This document shows positions 1 through 5,340 of a stretch of 5,340 nucleotides of DNA, piece by piece. Location of the stretch: positions 1 to 5,340 of the forward strand of contig BAAFSQ010000482.1 in NCBI GenBank assembly GCA_054661495.1, read 5' to 3'. The position numbers were made by a program, and so were the translations under genes. Position 1 is the stretch's first letter; every line of letters begins with the position of its first letter. Below the pieces are notes generated by a model. It was not told where the DNA came from. It saw nothing but the letters and a program-made list of their open reading frames with translations, and searched no databases. The DNA comes from Zygophlyctis sp. KS116. Lineage: Eukaryota; Fungi; Chytridiomycota.

Positions 1-8
1 AAAAAAAA
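1..8 (+). repeat. 5' A8 run (possible poly-A target site/TSD, or tail of an upstream tandem copy)
   Basis: aaaaaaaa at the window start, mirrored by A7 at the window end. Confidence 0.5.
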
Positions 9-26
9 CAACTTTAAGGCGCGATA

Positions 27-3000
27 ATGGCTAAATTAGTATCACGTATTTCTTTCTGGTTCTTAAACAATATTACAAATGCTAACAAAATGTTAAACAA
101 ATCGACATCAATAAACATGCACACCTATGAGATCACATTTGATCTCCTTGACCATGAGCTCTCATCTGATCTCACTCGAAATAAAAAGGCTTATAATGAC
201 CTTAATCGCTTTTATAGGATCAGACATGATCGTATCGCATTTTTGAAGATCCAAGATGATCTTGATACTACTACGAACGTTTATAATAACGTTATTCGAC
301 ATTTAGATATCTTTAAAGATATATTGTTTAAAGAAATCTTTCGAGATTTAGAGACTAAAAAGAGGGCACCTAGTGGCCTGATATATATTACACATAGAAG
401 GGTGATCACCTTCGTAATATGTAGAAAAAACAATAATCTGAATTATGCGAAACATAATTTATCTTATAGAAAAATATATTTAGAAAATCGTTTAGACAAT
501 CATATACACGGCAGTCCACTACAACTTACAGAACCATATTCCAATCATATTATTCATTATAAATTAAAGATAGAAATAATAGACACAAATATAAGGATCC
601 ATTACGTCACAGAAATGATCATAACTCGTCATCAGAATGTGGCTACGCGTCAAAAATTTACTTCTGAAATGGCACAAGGAAAAGAGAATTTCCCTGAGTT
701 CACTGAGGAAGAGTTAAAGGAATTCGGAGCTTTAACAGATATAAACGAGGCTACTTCCTTCCCACCAGAAATAGTAAAGAAAATTTGTCAAACTGTCAAT
801 GTTGCTGTTAGTATAAAACGCAAGCGCAAAGACGAGGATAGTGAAACAGAGCACAAGAAAATGAATCTTAATCAAGAACACTCAAACAAGCAGTTAAATC
901 ATGTTCCTCGAAAGACAATCAACGTCAACAGATTATACCTGGCCTCAATTGATCCTAAATTTGAAGACAAAGTTAGCGACAAAATTCAGGAGAATTTTAA
1001 AAATCAAATTCGAAGTAATTCTTTTTACCATTCCATCGCATGTATCGAGAGAGCAATTTATGATGATGAGAATACCAAATACACTCACCTTGAAACAGTA
1101 TCTGTAATCAGTTGGAAACAGTTTAATGATGCAAAAAAAATAATCACTATTAATGTTGATTCAGTAAAATTTAATCATCAACCTATCAAGGATAATACTT
1201 TAAAAGAATATATTGGCCAAATAATAATTCCTTTGCGCAATATAGATACAAATGATATAAAAACGATCCTAGAAAATGATAAATTAATGAATCAAACGAT
1301 AGAAAAATGGTACCAAACAAAATTCTACAAATATCTTCAATACGCAATATTAGAAAATGAAGATTCAAAAGTTTTATATATTACTTTTCACTACACGTTC
1401 CAGCAATGGTCGAAGATTTTTGATAAAGACAAATGGGTTAAAACAAAGAATATACTTAGAATCACGCCAAAAATACACTTCTCTGGTATTATCATCAGAG
1501 GTTATATCGAAAATACTCATATCGAAGCTATTTCAACTGGCGGATATGATATTAGAAAATCGTTTGAACAATATAAAAAACCACTGACGGTATATATAAT
1601 AGATCCTAACCATATCAGGATAAACCAGTATCTAAAAGTTCAGAAGAAAACGATCAAATCATGGAAACTGAAAAATAATAATAAAATGTATCTGAGCTTT
1701 TTACTCGGTAACCATGGAGCACATATGTTAAATGGAAACACAGACAACATGCAAATTGATACTCCACTTACCACACAAGAATCCTTTAAAATACATTACT
1801 TAAATATAAGAGGAATGAATATAAATAAACTTGAAATAATCAATAAATACATGGACAATAATCCAAAAACCATCCTTTGCGTAGCTGAGACATGGTTCAT
1901 CAAACATGAAGAAGTTCAAAAAAACAAATATTTTTTCAGCAGTAGCTTAAAACCAATATTAAAAGAAAAAGGGAGAAGACATGGTGGAGGATTATCAATC
2001 TTTGTTAGTAAAGATTTAAAAAACCACATTAAAATATCAAATCAACAACCAAATTATATAGAAACAAGTATATTAGGATCCAAACTCATCTTTGTCTATT
2101 TCAAGCCCAGTATGGGATCAGTAGAAATTAAATCTGAACTAGATAGAATTCATTACAAGAAACCTGATCTTCTTATCGGTGACTTCAATATAAACTTTAA
2201 ATTATTAAATAGCAATATACACAAACAAAATGCAGTATTGGATTATTGCAATCCAAGACAACTAAACTTGTGTGAATACAATTCAAATGATAATAACAAG
2301 TGGGACTTCTGCTTCACTACAAATAACATTAAATATCAATCAATCACATACACACGAAAAAGTAATTTTGTCAAAACCATTAAAAAGAATACAACTGAAA
2401 CAGAAATCGATCAAATAGAAATCAATGAGGAATACACGAATACAAATGATAAAGCTATCAAAACCGATCACGGGATCATAACTCTCAAGAATGTAAGATT
2501 TAAAACAACAACAGACAAAGAAGAACTCAATGACACAACCTATGAATCATACAATATTTGGAAATTACAGAATCCCACAATACGTATAAAGTTTATTAAA
2601 GAATATGAAAAAAACACAGATAATATACAAGGAATAAAAAATAGACTAGAAAATGCACAAACACCCTCTACACGACAGCAAATAATTGATGAATTCAACA
2701 ACTTTATAAATAATGCAATCCATCGTACATGCTACAATATTTTAGGAAAATCAAGATACAGAAACAAAAAAAACCCAAAAAGAAATCTACTTAAAAGACT
2801 TCAAAATTCTAATTCTGTCAGTAACACCAATCATATAATAAAATTATGGAAAAATGATAGAAATCCTATCGAACTTAAAGGAACAATTGACGAGGCAAAA
2901 AGCTATTACCAAAACTTATACAAGATAAACCAAGATAATGACATCATGGATATAGATGAAAAAGAAATTAACAATAAACGAGATCCTGAAACTAACATAC

Positions 3001-5258
3001 ATACTAATAATATTATTACTTCTCAACCAACAGCCTATAAAATATATAGTTTAATTAAAAAATACGACAGTTCAAAAGCGGCAGGACCAGAGAAAATCCC
3101 AGTTATCATTCTTAATAGACTTAAAGAATCAAAAACATTCTTAATTCATCTATCAGACTTATTTTACTATTGTTTAAAATACGAAATGAGCCCATTACAA
3201 TGGAATGAATCATTAATCTCAATTATCCCAAAAAATAATAAAAATGACTTTACAATTAATAACTCTAGAGGAATAGCACTTACCGCTGTTTTTAGACGCA
3301 TTTACGAAAAGATAGTGTTAGAAATAACACAACTAGAATCAATAAAAGATGGTTTTAAATTACATCCAAACCAACAAGGTTTCATCAAAAAAACCGGCAC
3401 AATACCCAATGCAATCATGGTACACGATAGCTTAAAATTCGGACGAAAAATTAAAATCTTCATAGACCTTAAGGCAGCATATGATAGAACAAACATAAAT
3501 CTAATATTAAAATATATGGAACAGAGACAAATACCCACCAAAATCATAAACGTTATCAAAAATCTATTTTCAAATTGTTCAAGTCGAGTATTATTTAATA
3601 ACGAAACCAGTGACACTTTCCAAAGAGAAACAGGCATCTTCCAAGGATCTATCTTAGCACCACTATTATTTAATATTTTTATAGACTCACTAGCAACCGA
3701 TCTACAAAAAGAAAGTGATTTCATACATCAAGACAATAAACAAATCCTACAAGAACAATCCGAACATAATCCCAGTAACGAAATTAGAAACAAAGTCAAA
3801 AACAGAGAATATGAAAAATGCATTAATGCAGACTGTACACATACGCTAAAACACCATGCAAATCTTCCAAATGATCATTTCATGTGCCCGATTCCACATT
3901 GCCATTACGTAGCAAGAATAAAAGGTTGTATTACAGCCCATATTAAAAAAAATCATAATAGTAATCAAGTAAATAAAGAATATTACAAACTAATGCCACA
4001 TTTCCTTTTCTTCGCAGACGATATTATTATCAACAGCACAAACGAAAACGAAGCACAAAGACTATTAAATATTATAGGAAACTGGTGTCAAGCAAACGGC
4101 ATGTCCCCAGGCTTCAACAAATGTAATTATATTAGCGATGAAGACCATGAACTAAAATTATTAAACGAAAACTTGGCACGCACAGAAACATACAAATATT
4201 TAGGTCTACCAATTAAACATGAAGGAATAGACTTCCGTACATATCTCCAAAATAAACATACGAAAACAAGAATCGAATTTGAAAAAATTAAAGTCAGTGG
4301 AAACTACCATAAGTCATATCAGCACAAAATCACTGTATTAAAATCACATGTACTATCACATCTAGAATACGCAATGGCAGTTATAGGACTGCTCACAGAA
4401 AAAGAAAGGAAAGAATTAACAAATGAAATTAAAAACATAGATATACTCATAAACCAAAGTCGTCGTTGGGCATGTAATATACCACTAAATGTAATACTAA
4501 ACAGTTGGATGACAAACATTTGGTCTTATTCAGACCTCCTCAACTACAGACAAGCCGCACTACAAGAACAAATATCAAATTTACCAGAAACAAACCCAAT
4601 CAGATCCTTAATCGAAAATACAAATATCATACCAGACAACATAAAAAAAGAATTACTATCACTTAGAACTACAAAATCTACAATATATAAGAAATTTATT
4701 GATGAAAGAAATACAAACAACCAAAAGTTAACTTTAGGACGCTACATCAATCACACCAAAAAACAATCGGTATCAATAAAACACACTGTATGCTATACAT
4801 TCCCATCAAAGAAAAATCATAAATCCAATTCTGATATAATTTTCTCATGCAAAGATCCAAAAATTCAAAAGAACGCAATATGCTGGAGACAGAGAATTGT
4901 ATATACACAATCCAAAGCAATTCATGTAGATAAACATCATAAATATAAATGCAAACATTGCGCCAAAGAATTTTCTATTGGACATGTGAAAGAATGCAAA
5001 TTAATCACTGAAGGTAAAAATAAGAACCCGAAATTGTGGCAAGCTTTCGTTAATGAAAGCAACCAATTTGAAAAGGATTATCCAGAAGCTAAAAACTACA
5101 CATTCTTAGACTTCTTGTTAAATAATCGCCATTTCAAATTATTTCAAAAACTCTATCTTATGGTCAATCATAACCTGCTTCAGAAGAGGTATCCTCAACC
5201 TTCAGAAGATAAATCATCTCCCCGGGCAGAGGACTCACAGGAGCTAAGGATGGAATAA
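27..5258 (+). CDS. Non-LTR retrotransposon polyprotein (N-terminal unknown/ORF1-like region, APE endonuclease, reverse transcriptase with inserted C2H2 finger, CCHC knuckle), 1743 aa
   Basis: Uninterrupted 5.2-kb ORF in AT-rich DNA. An in-frame TAA at 15-17 precedes the ATG, which has a strong Kozak context (A at -3, G at +4: ataATGG). Stop is TAA 5256-5258. APE and RT catalytic motifs are intact. Confidence 0.95.
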   Translation: MAKLVSRISFWFLNNITNANKMLNKSTSINMHTYEITFDLLDHELSSDLTRNKKAYNDLNRFYRIRHDRIAFLKIQDDLDTTTNVYNNVIRHLDIFKDILFKEIFRDLETKKRAPSGLIYITHRRVITFVICRKNNNLNYAKHNLSYRKIYLENRLDNHIHGSPLQLTEPYSNHIIHYKLKIEIIDTNIRIHYVTEMIITRHQNVATRQKFTSEMAQGKENFPEFTEEELKEFGALTDINEATSFPPEIVKKICQTVNVAVSIKRKRKDEDSETEHKKMNLNQEHSNKQLNHVPRKTINVNRLYLASIDPKFEDKVSDKIQENFKNQIRSNSFYHSIACIERAIYDDENTKYTHLETVSVISWKQFNDAKKIITINVDSVKFNHQPIKDNTLKEYIGQIIIPLRNIDTNDIKTILENDKLMNQTIEKWYQTKFYKYLQYAILENEDSKVLYITFHYTFQQWSKIFDKDKWVKTKNILRITPKIHFSGIIIRGYIENTHIEAISTGGYDIRKSFEQYKKPLTVYIIDPNHIRINQYLKVQKKTIKSWKLKNNNKMYLSFLLGNHGAHMLNGNTDNMQIDTPLTTQESFKIHYLNIRGMNINKLEIINKYMDNNPKTILCVAETWFIKHEEVQKNKYFFSSSLKPILKEKGRRHGGGLSIFVSKDLKNHIKISNQQPNYIETSILGSKLIFVYFKPSMGSVEIKSELDRIHYKKPDLLIGDFNINFKLLNSNIHKQNAVLDYCNPRQLNLCEYNSNDNNKWDFCFTTNNIKYQSITYTRKSNFVKTIKKNTTETEIDQIEINEEYTNTNDKAIKTDHGIITLKNVRFKTTTDKEELNDTTYESYNIWKLQNPTIRIKFIKEYEKNTDNIQGIKNRLENAQTPSTRQQIIDEFNNFINNAIHRTCYNILGKSRYRNKKNPKRNLLKRLQNSNSVSNTNHIIKLWKNDRNPIELKGTIDEAKSYYQNLYKINQDNDIMDIDEKEINNKRDPETNIHTNNIITSQPTAYKIYSLIKKYDSSKAAGPEKIPVIILNRLKESKTFLIHLSDLFYYCLKYEMSPLQWNESLISIIPKNNKNDFTINNSRGIALTAVFRRIYEKIVLEITQLESIKDGFKLHPNQQGFIKKTGTIPNAIMVHDSLKFGRKIKIFIDLKAAYDRTNINLILKYMEQRQIPTKIINVIKNLFSNCSSRVLFNNETSDTFQRETGIFQGSILAPLLFNIFIDSLATDLQKESDFIHQDNKQILQEQSEHNPSNEIRNKVKNREYEKCINADCTHTLKHHANLPNDHFMCPIPHCHYVARIKGCITAHIKKNHNSNQVNKEYYKLMPHFLFFADDIIINSTNENEAQRLLNIIGNWCQANGMSPGFNKCNYISDEDHELKLLNENLARTETYKYLGLPIKHEGIDFRTYLQNKHTKTRIEFEKIKVSGNYHKSYQHKITVLKSHVLSHLEYAMAVIGLLTEKERKELTNEIKNIDILINQSRRWACNIPLNVILNSWMTNIWSYSDLLNYRQAALQEQISNLPETNPIRSLIENTNIIPDNIKKELLSLRTTKSTIYKKFIDERNTNNQKLTLGRYINHTKKQSVSIKHTVCYTFPSKKNHKSNSDIIFSCKDPKIQKNAICWRQRIVYTQSKAIHVDKHHKYKCKHCAKEFSIGHVKECKLITEGKNKNPKLWQAFVNESNQFEKDYPEAKNYTFLDFLLNNRHFKLFQKLYLMVNHNLLQKRYPQPSEDKSSPRAEDSQELRME
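816..830 (+). other. Candidate nuclear localisation signal KRKRK (aa 264-268)
   Basis: Basic cluster KRKRK, followed 8 residues later by KK, within a charged, probably disordered stretch. Confidence 0.5.
1710..1739 (+). other. NxxxHxxNGN motif (NHGAHMLNGN, aa 562-571), candidate polyprotein processing site
   Basis: Reads MYLSFLLG-NHGAHMLNGN-TD and ends 16 aa before the first APE strand (KIHYLN). Function is inferred from recalled similarity to a viral motif. Confidence 0.5.
1785..2490 (+). other. APE-like (exonuclease/endonuclease/phosphatase family) endonuclease domain
   Basis: Motifs in the expected order: YLNIRG (1797-1814), CVAETW (E621, 1887), GGGLSIFV (1983), VYFKP (2094), IGDFN (2175-2189), WDFCF (D760, 2304), TDH (2463-2471, equivalent to SDH). 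Confidence 0.92.
3075..4215 (+). other. Non-LTR-type reverse transcriptase domain (motifs 0-7)
   Basis: KAAGPEKIP (motif 0, 3075), W..S.I.IIPK (3201-3233), SRGIAL (equivalent to YRPISL, 3264), QQGF (3372), FIDLKAAYD (3459-3485), GIFQGSILAPLLFNIFID (3633-3686), FADD (4011-4022), GMSPGFNKC (4098-4124), YKYLG (4191-4205). Confidence 0.96.
3879..3956 (+). other. Classical C2H2 zinc finger inserted within the RT domain
   Basis: FMCPIPHCHYVARIKGCITAHIKKNH = F-x-C-x4-C-x12-H-x4-H (C1287, C1292, H1305, H1310), with a hydrophobic Ile three residues before the first His as in the C2H2 consensus. Confidence 0.85.
4950..4997 (+). other. C-terminal CCHC zinc knuckle
   Basis: CKHCAKEFSIGHVKEC = C-x2-C-x7-H-x3-C, in the usual post-RT position for non-LTR ORF2 proteins. 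Confidence 0.8.
5178..5209 (+). repeat. 10-bp direct repeat CTTCAGAAGA x2
   Basis: Exact copies at 5178-5187 and 5200-5209, each preceded by AAC (directly, or with CTG between). Confidence 0.75.
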
Positions 5259-5292
5259 TGGATAGAGACCATCGGCATTCAATATAATGTCT

Positions 5293-5328
5293 CGGAATTT
5301 AAATTTATTAAATAAATATAATTTTCCG
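5293..5328 (+). other. Imperfect 3' UTR stem-loop
   Basis: CGGAA (5293-5297) pairs with TTCCG (5324-5328). Inner ATTTAT (5303-5308) pairs with ATAAAT (5312-5317). Confidence 0.5.
5311..5316 (+). promoter_or_regulatory. Polyadenylation signal AATAAA
   Basis: Canonical hexamer ending 17 nt before the terminal A run, with an overlapping ATTAAA at 5307-5312. Chance occurrence in AT-rich DNA is possible. Confidence 0.6.
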
Positions 5329-5333
5329 TTGTT

Positions 5334-5340
5334 AAAAAAA
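5334..5340 (+). repeat. 3' poly(A) tail / A-rich target site
   Basis: A7 at the window end, 75 nt after the stop codon. Confidence 0.6.

What the first reader, a model, noticed from the sequence alone, without database searches (positions are those of the whole stretch)
1686..1745. NxxxHxxNGN motif at the ORF1/ORF2-equivalent junction: candidate non-2A polyprotein separation signal
Seen: a basic stretch and a hydrophobic run (MYLSFLLG) followed by NHGAHMLNGN, ending just before the APE domain. Separation after N571 would yield a 571-aa N-terminal protein and a 1172-aa APE-RT-CCHC protein, a typical ORF2 size. Known: some LINEs (trypanosome L1Tc/ingi and several animal L2/CR1-group elements) carry 2A StopGo peptides (DxExNPGP) upstream of APE; no such peptide is present here. 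Recalled and needing verification: an N(K/R)xxHxxNGN motif occurs in polyproteins of IMNV-like/toti-like dsRNA viruses near the capsid processing site. Inference: this LINE expresses ORF1- and ORF2-like products from one ORF through a virus-shared self-cleavage (His/Asn chemistry) or ribosomal-skipping motif, an expression strategy I do not know to be described for retrotransposons.
Basis: partly seen in the sequence, partly recalled or inferred. Interest (0 to 1): 0.82.

Follow-up and report, generated by a model that had tools for sequence, protein, structure and literature searches.

The report
Virus-type NGN separator in a LINE
A jumping gene (LINE) that encodes everything in one long protein carries, 15 residues before its endonuclease domain, a short conserved peptide that RNA viruses use to cut their polyproteins. 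This suggests a second virus-shared way, besides 2A, for such elements to make two proteins from one gene.

Summary
The window is one 1743-aa ORF of an AT-rich APE-type non-LTR retrotransposon. NHGAHMLNGN is aa 562-571 (nt 1710-1739), 15 residues before the APE domain.

PMC7968656 describes NKxMHxxNGN as the cleavage motif of IMNV and Omono River virus. Cutting occurs after the last N, and a second viral copy reads NHVMHALNGN.

- **Spread in viruses:** Hits lie in polyproteins of toti-, picorna-, dicistro-, tombus- and flavi-like viruses, often two to four per protein.
- **Match to the LINE:** a viral subclass, S-[WYF]-[LM]-L-[TGS]-N-x-G-[MA]-H-x-x-N-G-N-[TIM], matches the LINE block SFLLGNHGAHMLNGNT at each of its specified positions. 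Nothing else in the ORF resembles these viruses.
- **Conservation:** the 16-residue block SFLLGNHGAHMLNGNT is identical in a relative that is only 37% identical overall. Within its first 15 codons there are 7 synonymous and 0 replacement changes.
- **Module boundary:** homology between relatives starts exactly at this junction.
- **A different device in a relative:** P0013 has a predicted ubiquitin-like domain ending LLGG at the same place.

Most likely the block releases a 68-kDa N-terminal protein from the 138-kDa APE-RT protein. Cleavage in the LINE, and its chemistry, remain untested.

The parts
27..5258 (+). Single ORF of 1743 aa (stop included) of an APE-type non-LTR retrotransposon
   Evidence: RVT_1 E=4e-26; APE relatives
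27..1685 (+). N-terminal region, aa 1-553: orphan, basic (pI about 9.4), ORF1-equivalent by position only
   Evidence: 0 stops here against 47 and 66 in the other two frames; P(open by chance) about 6e-21. No hit in 1.84 billion proteins, Pfam or PDB. AF2 pLDDT 31.
813..845 (+). Charged patch IKRKRKDEDSE (aa 263-273) between two halves of the N-terminal region; candidate nuclear localisation signal or linker
   Evidence: Read directly from the sequence; function inferred
1686..1739 (+).
1695..1739 (+). Conserved core SFLLGNHGAHMLNGN (aa 557-571). It is invariant in L001 and has L to V at one position in L002. It fits the viral G(+3) subclass of the NGN motif.
1710..1739 (+). Ten-residue motif N-H-G-A-H-M-L-N-G-N (aa 562-571), equivalent to the viral cleavage motif
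1737..1742 (+). Predicted separation point, N571 | T572
   Evidence: By analogy with OmRV N788|P789 and N243|I244. T is the second commonest residue after the viral motif. Not tested in the LINE.
1740..1784 (+). Variable linker, aa 572-586, between motif and APE; prone to insertions and deletions among relatives
   Evidence: Alignment A1: P0009 is 11 residues shorter than the window here and P0010 two residues longer (13 and 2 gap columns)
1785..2486 (+). Apurinic/apyrimidinic-type endonuclease (APE) domain, aa 587-820
   Evidence: 152 HMMER hits, all to this part; Exo_endo_phos weak, E=0.026; hallmark motifs
3078..4214 (+). Reverse transcriptase, aa about 1018-1396
   Evidence: PF00078 E=4e-26; motifs located
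3819..3956 (+). Cys/His-rich insertion inside RT between motif B and FADD (aa 1265-1310); shared with P0013
4950..4997 (+). C-terminal CX2CX7HX3C knuckle (aa 1642-1657), shared with P0001 and P0013
5259..5340 (+). Short 3' untranslated region with AATAAA-type signals and a terminal A run

Best explanation
The window is a full-length, single-ORF, APE-type LINE. Between a fast-evolving, lineage-specific N-terminal protein (aa 1-553) and the conserved APE-RT-CCHC enzyme sits a roughly 17-residue module (S557-T572). This module is a member of the 'NGN' cleavage-motif family of eukaryotic RNA-virus polyproteins (N-x-x-[MAQV]-H-x-x-N-G-N, cut after the last N).

Shown:
- The module is present and is under strong purifying selection at the peptide level.
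- It sits on a module boundary.
- It is the only part of the ORF shared with viruses.

Inferred:
- During or just after translation the chain is separated between N571 and T572. This gives a 68-kDa basic N-terminal protein ending in ...NGN and a 138-kDa APE-RT protein starting TDNMQ.... The element thus gets ORF1-like and ORF2-like products from one ORF, as 2A does in L1Tc/ingi and in CR1/L2/Rex1 elements.
- Mechanism. All conserved residues lie on the N-terminal side of the cut. The residue after the cut is free to vary. Viral copies work in unrelated polyproteins and can sit only 15-40 residues apart. The unit is therefore a short, self-contained, cis-acting peptide.
- I rank the mechanisms as follows: a nascent-chain event at the ribosome (StopGo-like but proline-independent) about equal with Asn-driven self-cleavage (succinimide formation at N571, helped by H566), and a ubiquitous host protease third.
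For: - **Motif and literature:** cleavage after NGN in IMNV and OmRV, with a second viral copy NHVMHALNGN.
- **Spread in viruses:** at least 120 IMG/VR contigs carry the back-translated motif, against 16 for a codon-order-reversed control. Nearly all copies lie in ORFs of 300-2900 aa, and 154 distinct copies were found, with up to 4 per polyprotein. Host viruses include OmRV itself (L003) and picorna-, dicistro-, tombus/noda- and flavi-like genomes.
- **Position 4:** A at position 4, as in the LINE, occurs in 7 viral copies.
- **Extended match:** the 13-member subclass with G at +3 has the consensus S-[WYF]-[LM]-L-[TGS]-N-K-G-[MA]-H-x-x-N-G-N-[TIM], and the LINE fits each of its specified positions (position 2 as the minority H seen in L064). 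L064 is 67% identical over 21 aa and L089 65% over 20 aa, with nothing else shared. The post hoc regex expectation is 7e-8.
- **Profile score:** the viral-motif profile scores the window at 15.8 bits and P0009/P0010 at about 20 bits. The 155 other LINE proteins score 2.3 or less, and shuffles 9.8 or less.
- **Conservation:** 16 of 16 residues are identical in a 37%-identical relative, with 7 synonymous and 0 non-synonymous codon differences.
- **Module boundary:** homology of L001, L002 and P0013 to the window begins at aa 545, 548 and 567.
- **Relative with another device:** P0013 has a predicted ubiquitin-fold domain ending LLGG, aligned within one residue of the NGN cut. This is independent support that the junction is a processing site.
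- **Precedent:** 2A sits immediately upstream of APE in single-ORF LINEs.
Against: - No experiment shows cleavage in this or any LINE.
- Only three sequences carry the junction, and two of them are degenerate or fragmentary copies.
- The mechanism of the viral motif is itself unknown. One paper simply attributes the processing to 'endogenous cell proteases'.
- Other single-ORF relatives (P0068, P0111, P0134, P0118, P0093, P0137) have a long N-terminal region fused to APE with no recognisable separator. Separation is therefore not obligatory in this group.
- Position 4 is A rather than the usual M.
- The N-terminal region has no detectable RNA-binding or other ORF1 domain.
- The LLG just before the motif could instead be the tail of a decayed ubiquitin-like domain.
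Confidence: 0.62

Rival explanations
1. The block is conserved for a reason other than separation, for example an N-terminal extension of the endonuclease, a docking or localisation peptide, or a regulatory degron. Its likeness to the viral motif would then be convergence.
For: Conservation alone does not show cleavage. Other single-ORF relatives lack any separator. Only three sequences are available.
Against: The block lies outside the APE fold: about 150 APE proteins start 15 or more residues downstream. It is followed by an indel-prone linker. The 16-17-residue match to a viral peptide whose only known role is marking a cleavage site is hard to get by convergence on another function.
Confidence: 0.17
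2. The junction is a ubiquitin-like processing site. A Ubl domain ends in ...LLG and a host deubiquitinase-type protease cuts there, as predicted for P0013 (LLGG). The NHGAHMLNGN stretch is secondary.
For: The P0013 model is a beta-grasp fold, with ubiquitin/SUMO as all top PDB hits and LLGG at its end. The P0013 Ubl aligns with P0009 aa 23-78 at z=4.8, reached by 2 of 1000 shuffles.
Against: The window has LLGN, not GG. Its upstream sequence shows no significant similarity to the Ubl (z=0.7-1.3), and only about 43 residues separate the candidate first strand from LLG. Pfam finds no ubiquitin family in any of the three. This reading does not explain the invariant ten residues after LLG or their match to viruses.
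Confidence: 0.07
3. The APE-RT protein is made by internal initiation at M554. A Met lies 1-3 residues before the block in all three copies. The block would then be the N-terminal leader of an ORF2-type protein, with or without later removal at NGN, as with 2A at the start of the L1Tc ORF.
For: M554 is present in the window and L002, and a Met directly precedes SFLLG in L001. In L002 the homology begins about 20 nt upstream of that ATG, 225 nt after a host gene.
Against: The Met is not at the same aligned position in L001. L002 is a degenerate copy with stops, so its 5' end may be a truncation. The window and L001 are open in frame far upstream. Viral copies need no Met.
Confidence: 0.1
4. Chance occurrence of an Asn-rich pattern in an Asn-rich protein.
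For: The protein is 10.5% Asn.
Against: Expectation is 0.0018 per protein for the bare motif and about 7e-8 with the subclass flanks. The block is invariant under synonymous change in diverged relatives and is placed exactly at the domain junction.
Confidence: 0.01

Closest known systems
'Cleavage motif' (CM) NKxMHxxNGN of infectious myonecrosis virus and Omono River virus (toti-like dsRNA viruses; PMC7968656)
   Same: The same ten-residue pattern, with H at position 2 as in OmRV CM-2 (7 of 10 identical to NHVMHALNGN). It lies in a long ORF at the boundary between two proteins. The residue after the motif (T, or I in L002) is among the commonest viral ones.
   Different: The host is a retrotransposon, not an RNA virus. 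Position 4 is A instead of M, a minority state in viruses. Cleavage is not shown here. The LINE copy belongs to a subclass (hydrophobic-L-L-[TGS] before the motif, G at +3) that I found in picorna-, dicistro-, tombus- and flavi-like contigs and in L119, whose virus group is unassigned (PLA2-like domain only), rather than in OmRV itself.
2A / StopGo peptides (D(V/I)ExNPGP) in L1Tc/ingi and in CR1, L2, Rex1 and Crack LINEs (PMC3708506, PMC3894237)
   Same: A short virus-shared peptide placed immediately upstream of APE in a single-ORF LINE. All conserved residues lie before the break. It is portable between unrelated polyproteins and occurs in multiple copies in some viruses. In L012/L013 an NPGP 2A sits 4 residues before an NGN motif.
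   Different: There is no NPGP. The residue after the break is variable rather than an obligatory Pro, so a 2A-type mechanism cannot apply as such. The mechanism is unknown.
Ubiquitin-fusion processing (natural Ub-ribosomal protein and polyubiquitin precursors cut after GG by deubiquitinases; established knowledge)
   Same: The relative P0013 has a predicted ubiquitin-fold domain ending LLGG about 10 residues before APE, aligned within one residue of the NGN cut. It would serve the same purpose of two proteins from one ORF.
   Different: The window has LLGN and no demonstrable Ubl fold. The P0013 model comes from a single sequence (pLDDT 68) and has no sequence-level family hit.
Asn-cyclisation self-cleavage (intein C-terminal HN, FlhB/EscU NPTH, reovirus mu1 N42/P43, nodavirus/tetravirus capsid Asn-Ala/Phe; recalled from general knowledge)
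   Same: The cut is after Asn, with a conserved His nearby. OmRV CM-1 is cut at Asn-Pro.
   Different: Those systems need a folded domain around the site. The NGN unit works in roughly 15-residue tandem spacing and shows no similarity to those families. Not tested.

Membership tests
Viral NGN cleavage motif (CM; IMNV/OmRV type) | Core pattern N-x-x-x-H-x-x-N-G-N in frame in a long ORF | tested here: met
   aa 562-571; unique in six frames
Viral NGN cleavage motif (CM; IMNV/OmRV type) | K, H or Q at position 2 | tested here: met
   H, as in OmRV CM-2 and L064. Viral counts: K73, Q12, H10.
Viral NGN cleavage motif (CM; IMNV/OmRV type) | Met at position 4 (published motif NKxMH) | tested here: not met
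   The LINE has Ala. However, among 51 further viral copies not selected for M, position 4 is M, Q, A, V, T, S, I or C, with A in 7 (L005, L031, L039, L069 twice, L089, L121). M is therefore typical but not defining.
Viral NGN cleavage motif (CM; IMNV/OmRV type) | Scores as a member against a profile of viral copies | tested here: met
   15.8 bits at aa 557-574 (E=6.6e-5 in 158 sequences); P0009 20.4, P0010 20.6; other LINE proteins 2.3 or less; 5000 shuffles 9.8 or less
Viral NGN cleavage motif (CM; IMNV/OmRV type) | Sits at a boundary between separately functioning proteins | tested here: met
   15 residues before APE. Homology with L001, L002 and P0013 starts here. In L025 and L050 the motif lies about 100 aa before the coat domain.
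Viral NGN cleavage motif (CM; IMNV/OmRV type) | Chain is broken after the last Asn | not testable with these tools
   Needs translation assays or proteomics. Shown only for OmRV and IMNV.
2A / StopGo peptide | C-terminal D(V/I)ExNPG|P | tested here: not met
   No NPGP or D-x-E-x-NPG in the ORF
2A / StopGo peptide | [quoted passage not shown] | tested here: met
   Position as described for L1Tc, ingi and CR1-17_BF. This is a resemblance in use, not membership.
APE-type non-LTR retrotransposon | APE domain followed by RT in one ORF | tested here: met
   152 APE hits; RVT_1 E=4e-26; 30% identity over 1179 alignment columns to the full-length relative P0013
APE-type non-LTR retrotransposon | 3' poly(A)/A-rich tail and target-site duplication | tested here: inconclusive
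   The window ends in an A run after AATAAA-like signals. The flanks are too short to see a duplication.
Ubiquitin-like-GG fusion junction | Beta-grasp fold ending in GG directly before the downstream protein | tested here: inconclusive
   Met for the relative P0013. For the window: LLGN, no significant similarity to the P0013 Ubl, an unusable AF2 model, and no structure jobs left.

The most novel reading that the evidence does not exclude
The NGN peptide is a second, proline-independent class of autonomous protein-separation module, distinct from 2A. It is used by many unrelated eukaryotic RNA viruses and has been captured by, or shared with, a LINE. In this LINE group the ORF1/APE junction is a swappable 'separator slot', filled by an NGN peptide in one lineage and by a ubiquitin-like-GG domain in another.
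Probability: 0.4. Interest if true: 0.9.

Novelty: new variant of a known kind. Interest (0 to 1): 0.82.

Why it matters
How LINEs with one ORF obtain separate RNA-binding and enzymatic proteins is an open question. So far 2A is the only known answer, and a review states that APE-LINE proteins are otherwise not processed.

- **For LINE biology:** a second, unrelated virus-type separator at the same place, plus a ubiquitin-like-GG domain at that place in a relative, would show that the junction is a general processing point. It would also show that short separator peptides move between RNA viruses and retrotransposons.
- **For virology:** the IMNV/OmRV motif has been discussed in only one paper of the searchable library. 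It turns out to be common, multi-copy and spread over at least five RNA-virus lineages, which makes its unknown mechanism worth solving.
- **As a tool:** a roughly 17-residue separator that does not leave or need a proline could be useful for co-expression.

Tried and rejected
- **Exact-protein lookup of the ORF:** not on record.
- **Word-based protein searches:**
  - The whole ORF gave only 8 distant APE-RT hits.
  - Region 540-600 against long proteins gave none.
  - Alignment A1 gave only P0009 and P0031.
- **JGI metagenome scans:**
  - Block patterns gave 161 pattern hits but no LINE relative.
  - P0015 gave one 5'-truncated copy, L123, that starts just after the motif and so is uninformative.
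  - The JGI contig holding P0031 and P0015, with a 206-aa gene upstream, has no DNA available.
- **AlphaFold of aa 1-600 without an alignment:** pLDDT 31, unusable, so nothing is concluded about the N-terminal fold or a Ubl in the window.
- **Family and structure-sequence searches:**
- a quick Smith-Waterman comparison in a script gave no significant score.
- **Viral origin of the N-terminal region:** rejected. There is no similarity to 389 viral ORFs outside aa 552-576 and none in 1.84 billion proteins.
- **Nucleotide-level conservation (RNA element):** rejected, because 7 of 15 codons differ synonymously.
- **Host organism:** not identified. The gene beside L002 is a eukaryote-type uridine phosphorylase.
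- **Literature on the mechanism of the viral motif:** none found.
- **Scope of the motif profile:** it covers 24 columns of a short peptide and was used only for scoring. No gene or genome consensus was built.
- **Operators' rules:** no contig was taken for human, and no spliced model, toxin gene or broken virus gene was involved.
Full report
**1. What is in the window**

The window holds one ORF, nt 27-5258, of 1743 aa on the + strand. The DNA is 27-35% G+C with a strong A excess on the coding strand.

The domains, in order:
- **RT:** Pfam finds RVT_1 at E=4e-26.
- **APE:** the endonuclease is too diverged for Pfam (Exo_endo_phos, E=0.026). However, a full HMMER search of aa 1-830 against 1.84 billion proteins gave 152 hits, all to aa about 585-830. 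Most were roughly 1000-aa APE-RT proteins whose own residues 2-10 align to query 582-590. APE therefore starts at about aa 586-587, and its hallmark motifs are located.
- **C-terminus:** a CX2CX7HX3C knuckle (aa 1642-1657), shared with P0001 and P0013.
- **N-terminus:** aa 1-543 hit nothing in that search, in Pfam or in PDB sequences. The region is nevertheless certainly coding: it has 0 stops against 47 and 66 in the other two frames, and P(open by chance) is about 6e-21.

The element is a single-ORF APE-type non-LTR retrotransposon with an orphan, basic 553-aa N-terminal region.

**2. The observation**

Nt 1686-1745 encode aa 554-573, M-Y-L-S-F-L-L-G then N-H-G-A-H-M-L-N-G-N then T-D.
- The motif occurs once in six frames. 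No 2A signature exists.
- Its chance expectation in this Asn-rich protein is 0.0018.
- Separation after N571 would give products of 67.9 and 137.7 kDa.

**3. The recalled viral motif is real**

PMC7968656 states that the capsid-protein N-termini of IMNV and Omono River virus arise by cleavage after a conserved NKxMHxxNGN. OmRV also has a second copy, NHVMHALNGN (residues 234-243). The cryo-EM chains start at Pro789 and Ile244, directly after the two motifs. The window motif matches the second copy at 7 of 10 positions. No paper in the library gives a mechanism; one legend speaks of 'endogenous cell proteases'. Only this one paper in the library writes out the NKxMHxxNGN motif.

**4. The motif is widespread in RNA viruses**

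The same codons in reverse order gave 16 hits, mostly on large DNA-virus contigs.

*Context.* The real hits are almost all inside ORFs of 300-2900 aa on contigs of 1-12 kb. L003 is 7611 nt, the length the paper gives for OmRV-AK4. It carries exactly the two published motifs, followed by I and P.

*Variation.* Within the fetched polyproteins there are 154 distinct H-x-x-N-G-N sites.
- Almost all of them (148 of 154) have N at position 1.
- Position 4 is usually M but also Q, A, V, T, S, I or C.
- The residue after the motif is I, T, M, P and others.

*Copy number and spacing.* Many polyproteins carry 2-4 copies. Some are only 15-40 residues apart (L089, L012, L031, L039, L034). In L012/L013 an NPGP 2A lies four residues before an NGN motif.

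*Carriers.* They include a picorna-like genome (L089: Rhv, helicase, RdRP_1) and a dicistro-like one (L106). There are also two genomes with a tombus/noda-type S-domain coat, where the motif lies about 100 aa upstream of it (L025, L050), and one with a flavi/tombus-type RdRp (L064).

A short unit that works in unrelated polyproteins, including viruses with no protease, and in tandem looks like a portable, self-contained module. This is the same kind of distribution as 2A.

**5. The LINE block is a member of this family, over more than the ten residues**

- **Profile score.** A 24-column profile of 139 non-redundant viral copies scores the window ORF at aa 557-574 with 15.8 bits, and the two relatives with about 20 bits. 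The other 155 LINE-type proteins fetched score 2.3 bits or less, and 5000 shuffles of the ORF reach at most 9.8.
- **Subclass match.** The 13 viral copies with G at +3 form a subclass with its own upstream signature: S at -5, W/Y/F at -4, L/M at -3 and -2, and T/G/S at -1. The other copies have A-K-L-[HW] there. The LINE reads S-F-L-L-G, then N-H-G-A-H-M-L-N-G-N, then T-D. It fits each specified position of the subclass, with the minority H at position 2.
- **Nearest viral copies.** L064 and L089 are 67% and 65% identical to the LINE over 20-21 residues. Nothing else in the 1743-aa ORF resembles any of 389 viral ORFs.
- **Regex test.** A regex for the subclass finds only the window, P0009, P0010 and six viral copies. 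Its expectation in the window ORF is about 7e-8, though the pattern was defined post hoc.

**6. Conservation in homologous elements**

Only two other sequences cover the junction.

- **L001/P0009** (ENA metagenome contig) is 37% identical to the window over aa 545-915, yet S-F-L-L-G-N-H-G-A-H-M-L-N-G-N-T is 16 of 16 identical.
- **L002/P0010** is a degenerate copy. It has one L to V change and I instead of T after the motif.
- **Codons.** Within the first 15 codons of the block, window and L001 differ at 7 codons, all synonymously. Selection therefore acts on the peptide, not on an RNA or DNA element.
- **Linker.** The linker between motif and APE differs in length: P0009 is 11 residues shorter than the window and P0010 two residues longer.

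**7. The junction is a module boundary, and a relative fills it differently**

Similarity of L001 and L002 to the window begins at aa 545 and 548. L001 has an unrelated in-frame open region upstream.

The full-length relative P0013 (1890 aa; L140, 5782 nt) is 30% identical to the window from aa 567 to 1709. It includes the same Cys/His insertion in RT, but its 714-aa N-terminal region is unrelated.

Just before its APE, P0013 has a segment that AlphaFold folds, from the single sequence, into a beta-grasp (pLDDT 68). Every top PDB match is ubiquitin or SUMO (TM about 0.70 on the target, probability 1.0). The fold ends in L-L-G-G at residue 718, followed by a disordered linker. BLASTP aligns G718 with G570 of the window, so the expected cut after GG is one residue from the NGN cut.

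Ubiquitin-GG fusions are the classical cellular way to release two proteins from one ORF. Finding one at this position in a relative is independent support that the junction is a processing site.

The P0013 Ubl also aligns with P0009 aa 23-78 (z=4.8; reached by 2 of 1000 shuffles; controls about 0). It does not align significantly with the window. L001 may therefore have both devices, and the L-L-G of the block may descend from a Ubl tail. This is unresolved.

**8. Mechanism**

Shown: membership in the motif family, purifying selection, placement at the junction, and no shared flanks with viruses.

Inferred: the chain is separated at N571|T572. The features bearing on how are these:
- All conserved positions lie on the N-terminal side of the cut.
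- The residue after the cut is free, so classical 2A chemistry, which needs Pro, is excluded.
- The unit is about 15-17 residues.
- It works in unrelated polyproteins.

These features fit a nascent-chain event at the ribosome, or an Asn-driven self-cleavage in which the N571 side chain attacks its own carbonyl with H566 as helper. If the segment is helical, N562, H566 and N569 fall on one face. A ubiquitous host protease is the third option. I cannot separate these by computation.

**9. Arguments against**

- No cleavage data exist for any LINE.
- Only three junction sequences are available.
- Several GC-rich single-ORF relatives fuse a long N-terminal region to APE with no visible separator.
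- The N-terminal region has no recognisable ORF1 domain.
- The structure prediction of the window's N-terminus failed.

**10. Comparison and novelty**

The block works like 2A in L1Tc/ingi and CR1/L2/Rex1 LINEs, which sits immediately upstream of APE in single-ORF elements. It is not a 2A. It is a member, by sequence, of the IMNV/OmRV cleavage-motif family. I found no report of that motif in retrotransposons, nor of a Ubl-GG junction in a LINE.

I rate it a new variant of a known kind: a virus-type separator peptide in a single-ORF LINE. Interest is high, because the peptide class is itself barely studied and proves to be widespread.

Noticed in passing
L140 (Logan SRR28411040 contig, ORF 33-5705 = P0013), protein residues about 630-718: A full-length single-ORF LINE related to the window carries a predicted ubiquitin-fold domain ending LLGG about 10 residues before its APE domain. 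AF2 gives pLDDT 68, and all top Foldseek PDB hits are ubiquitin or SUMO. I found no report of such a junction in LINEs.
   Followed up: partly
IMG/VR loci L003-L122: The IMNV/OmRV 'cleavage motif' is far more widespread than the one paper suggests. At least 120 contigs carry it, with 154 distinct copies and up to 4 per polyprotein, in toti-, picorna-, dicistro-, tombus/noda- and flavi-like genomes. A reversed-codon control gave 16 hits.
   Followed up: partly
L012 nt about 700-765 and L013 (same sequence): A 2A-type G-I-E-P-N-P-G-P is followed four residues later by an NGN motif (NKEMHAQNGN). Two different separator peptides therefore sit back to back. Several other copies share the G-P-T prefix before the motif.
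   Followed up: no
window 3819-3956 (aa 1265-1310): A Cys/His-rich insertion, zinc-finger-like by eye, lies inside the reverse transcriptase between motif B and the FADD motif. P0013 shares it at the same place. No Pfam family matches (zf_CopZ, E=0.33).
   Followed up: partly
L089 ORF 584-9283, protein residues 2612-2708: A picorna-like polyprotein ends with a diacylglycerol-kinase catalytic domain (DAGK_cat, 29.7 bits, above the curated cut-off of 23.6). This is an unusual passenger for such a virus.
   Followed up: no
L002 nt 35-607 and 833-1759: A degenerate copy of the LINE, with stops and frame breaks, begins about 225 nt downstream of a eukaryote-type uridine phosphorylase gene (best PDB match 6k5g, E=3e-26). 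Its homology to the window starts only about 20 nt before the Met of the block.
   Followed up: partly
L123 nt 1-125 and about 1612-1735; nt 1770-1830: This JGI contig repeats about 120 nt of non-element sequence directly before a 5'-truncated LINE copy. It also has a small tandem duplication (V-I-N-I-R-G-M-N twice) at the start of the APE.
   Followed up: no
L119 ORF 2570-6805 (- strand), protein residues 455-506: A polyprotein with two NGN motifs carries a phospholipase-A2-like domain (Phospholip_A2_4, E=4.6e-7).
   Followed up: no
window 1-26 and 5259-5340: The 5' leader before the ATG is only 26 nt and starts with an A run. The 3' end has AATAAA-like signals and ends in an A run. The flanks are too short to look for a target-site duplication.
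   Followed up: no
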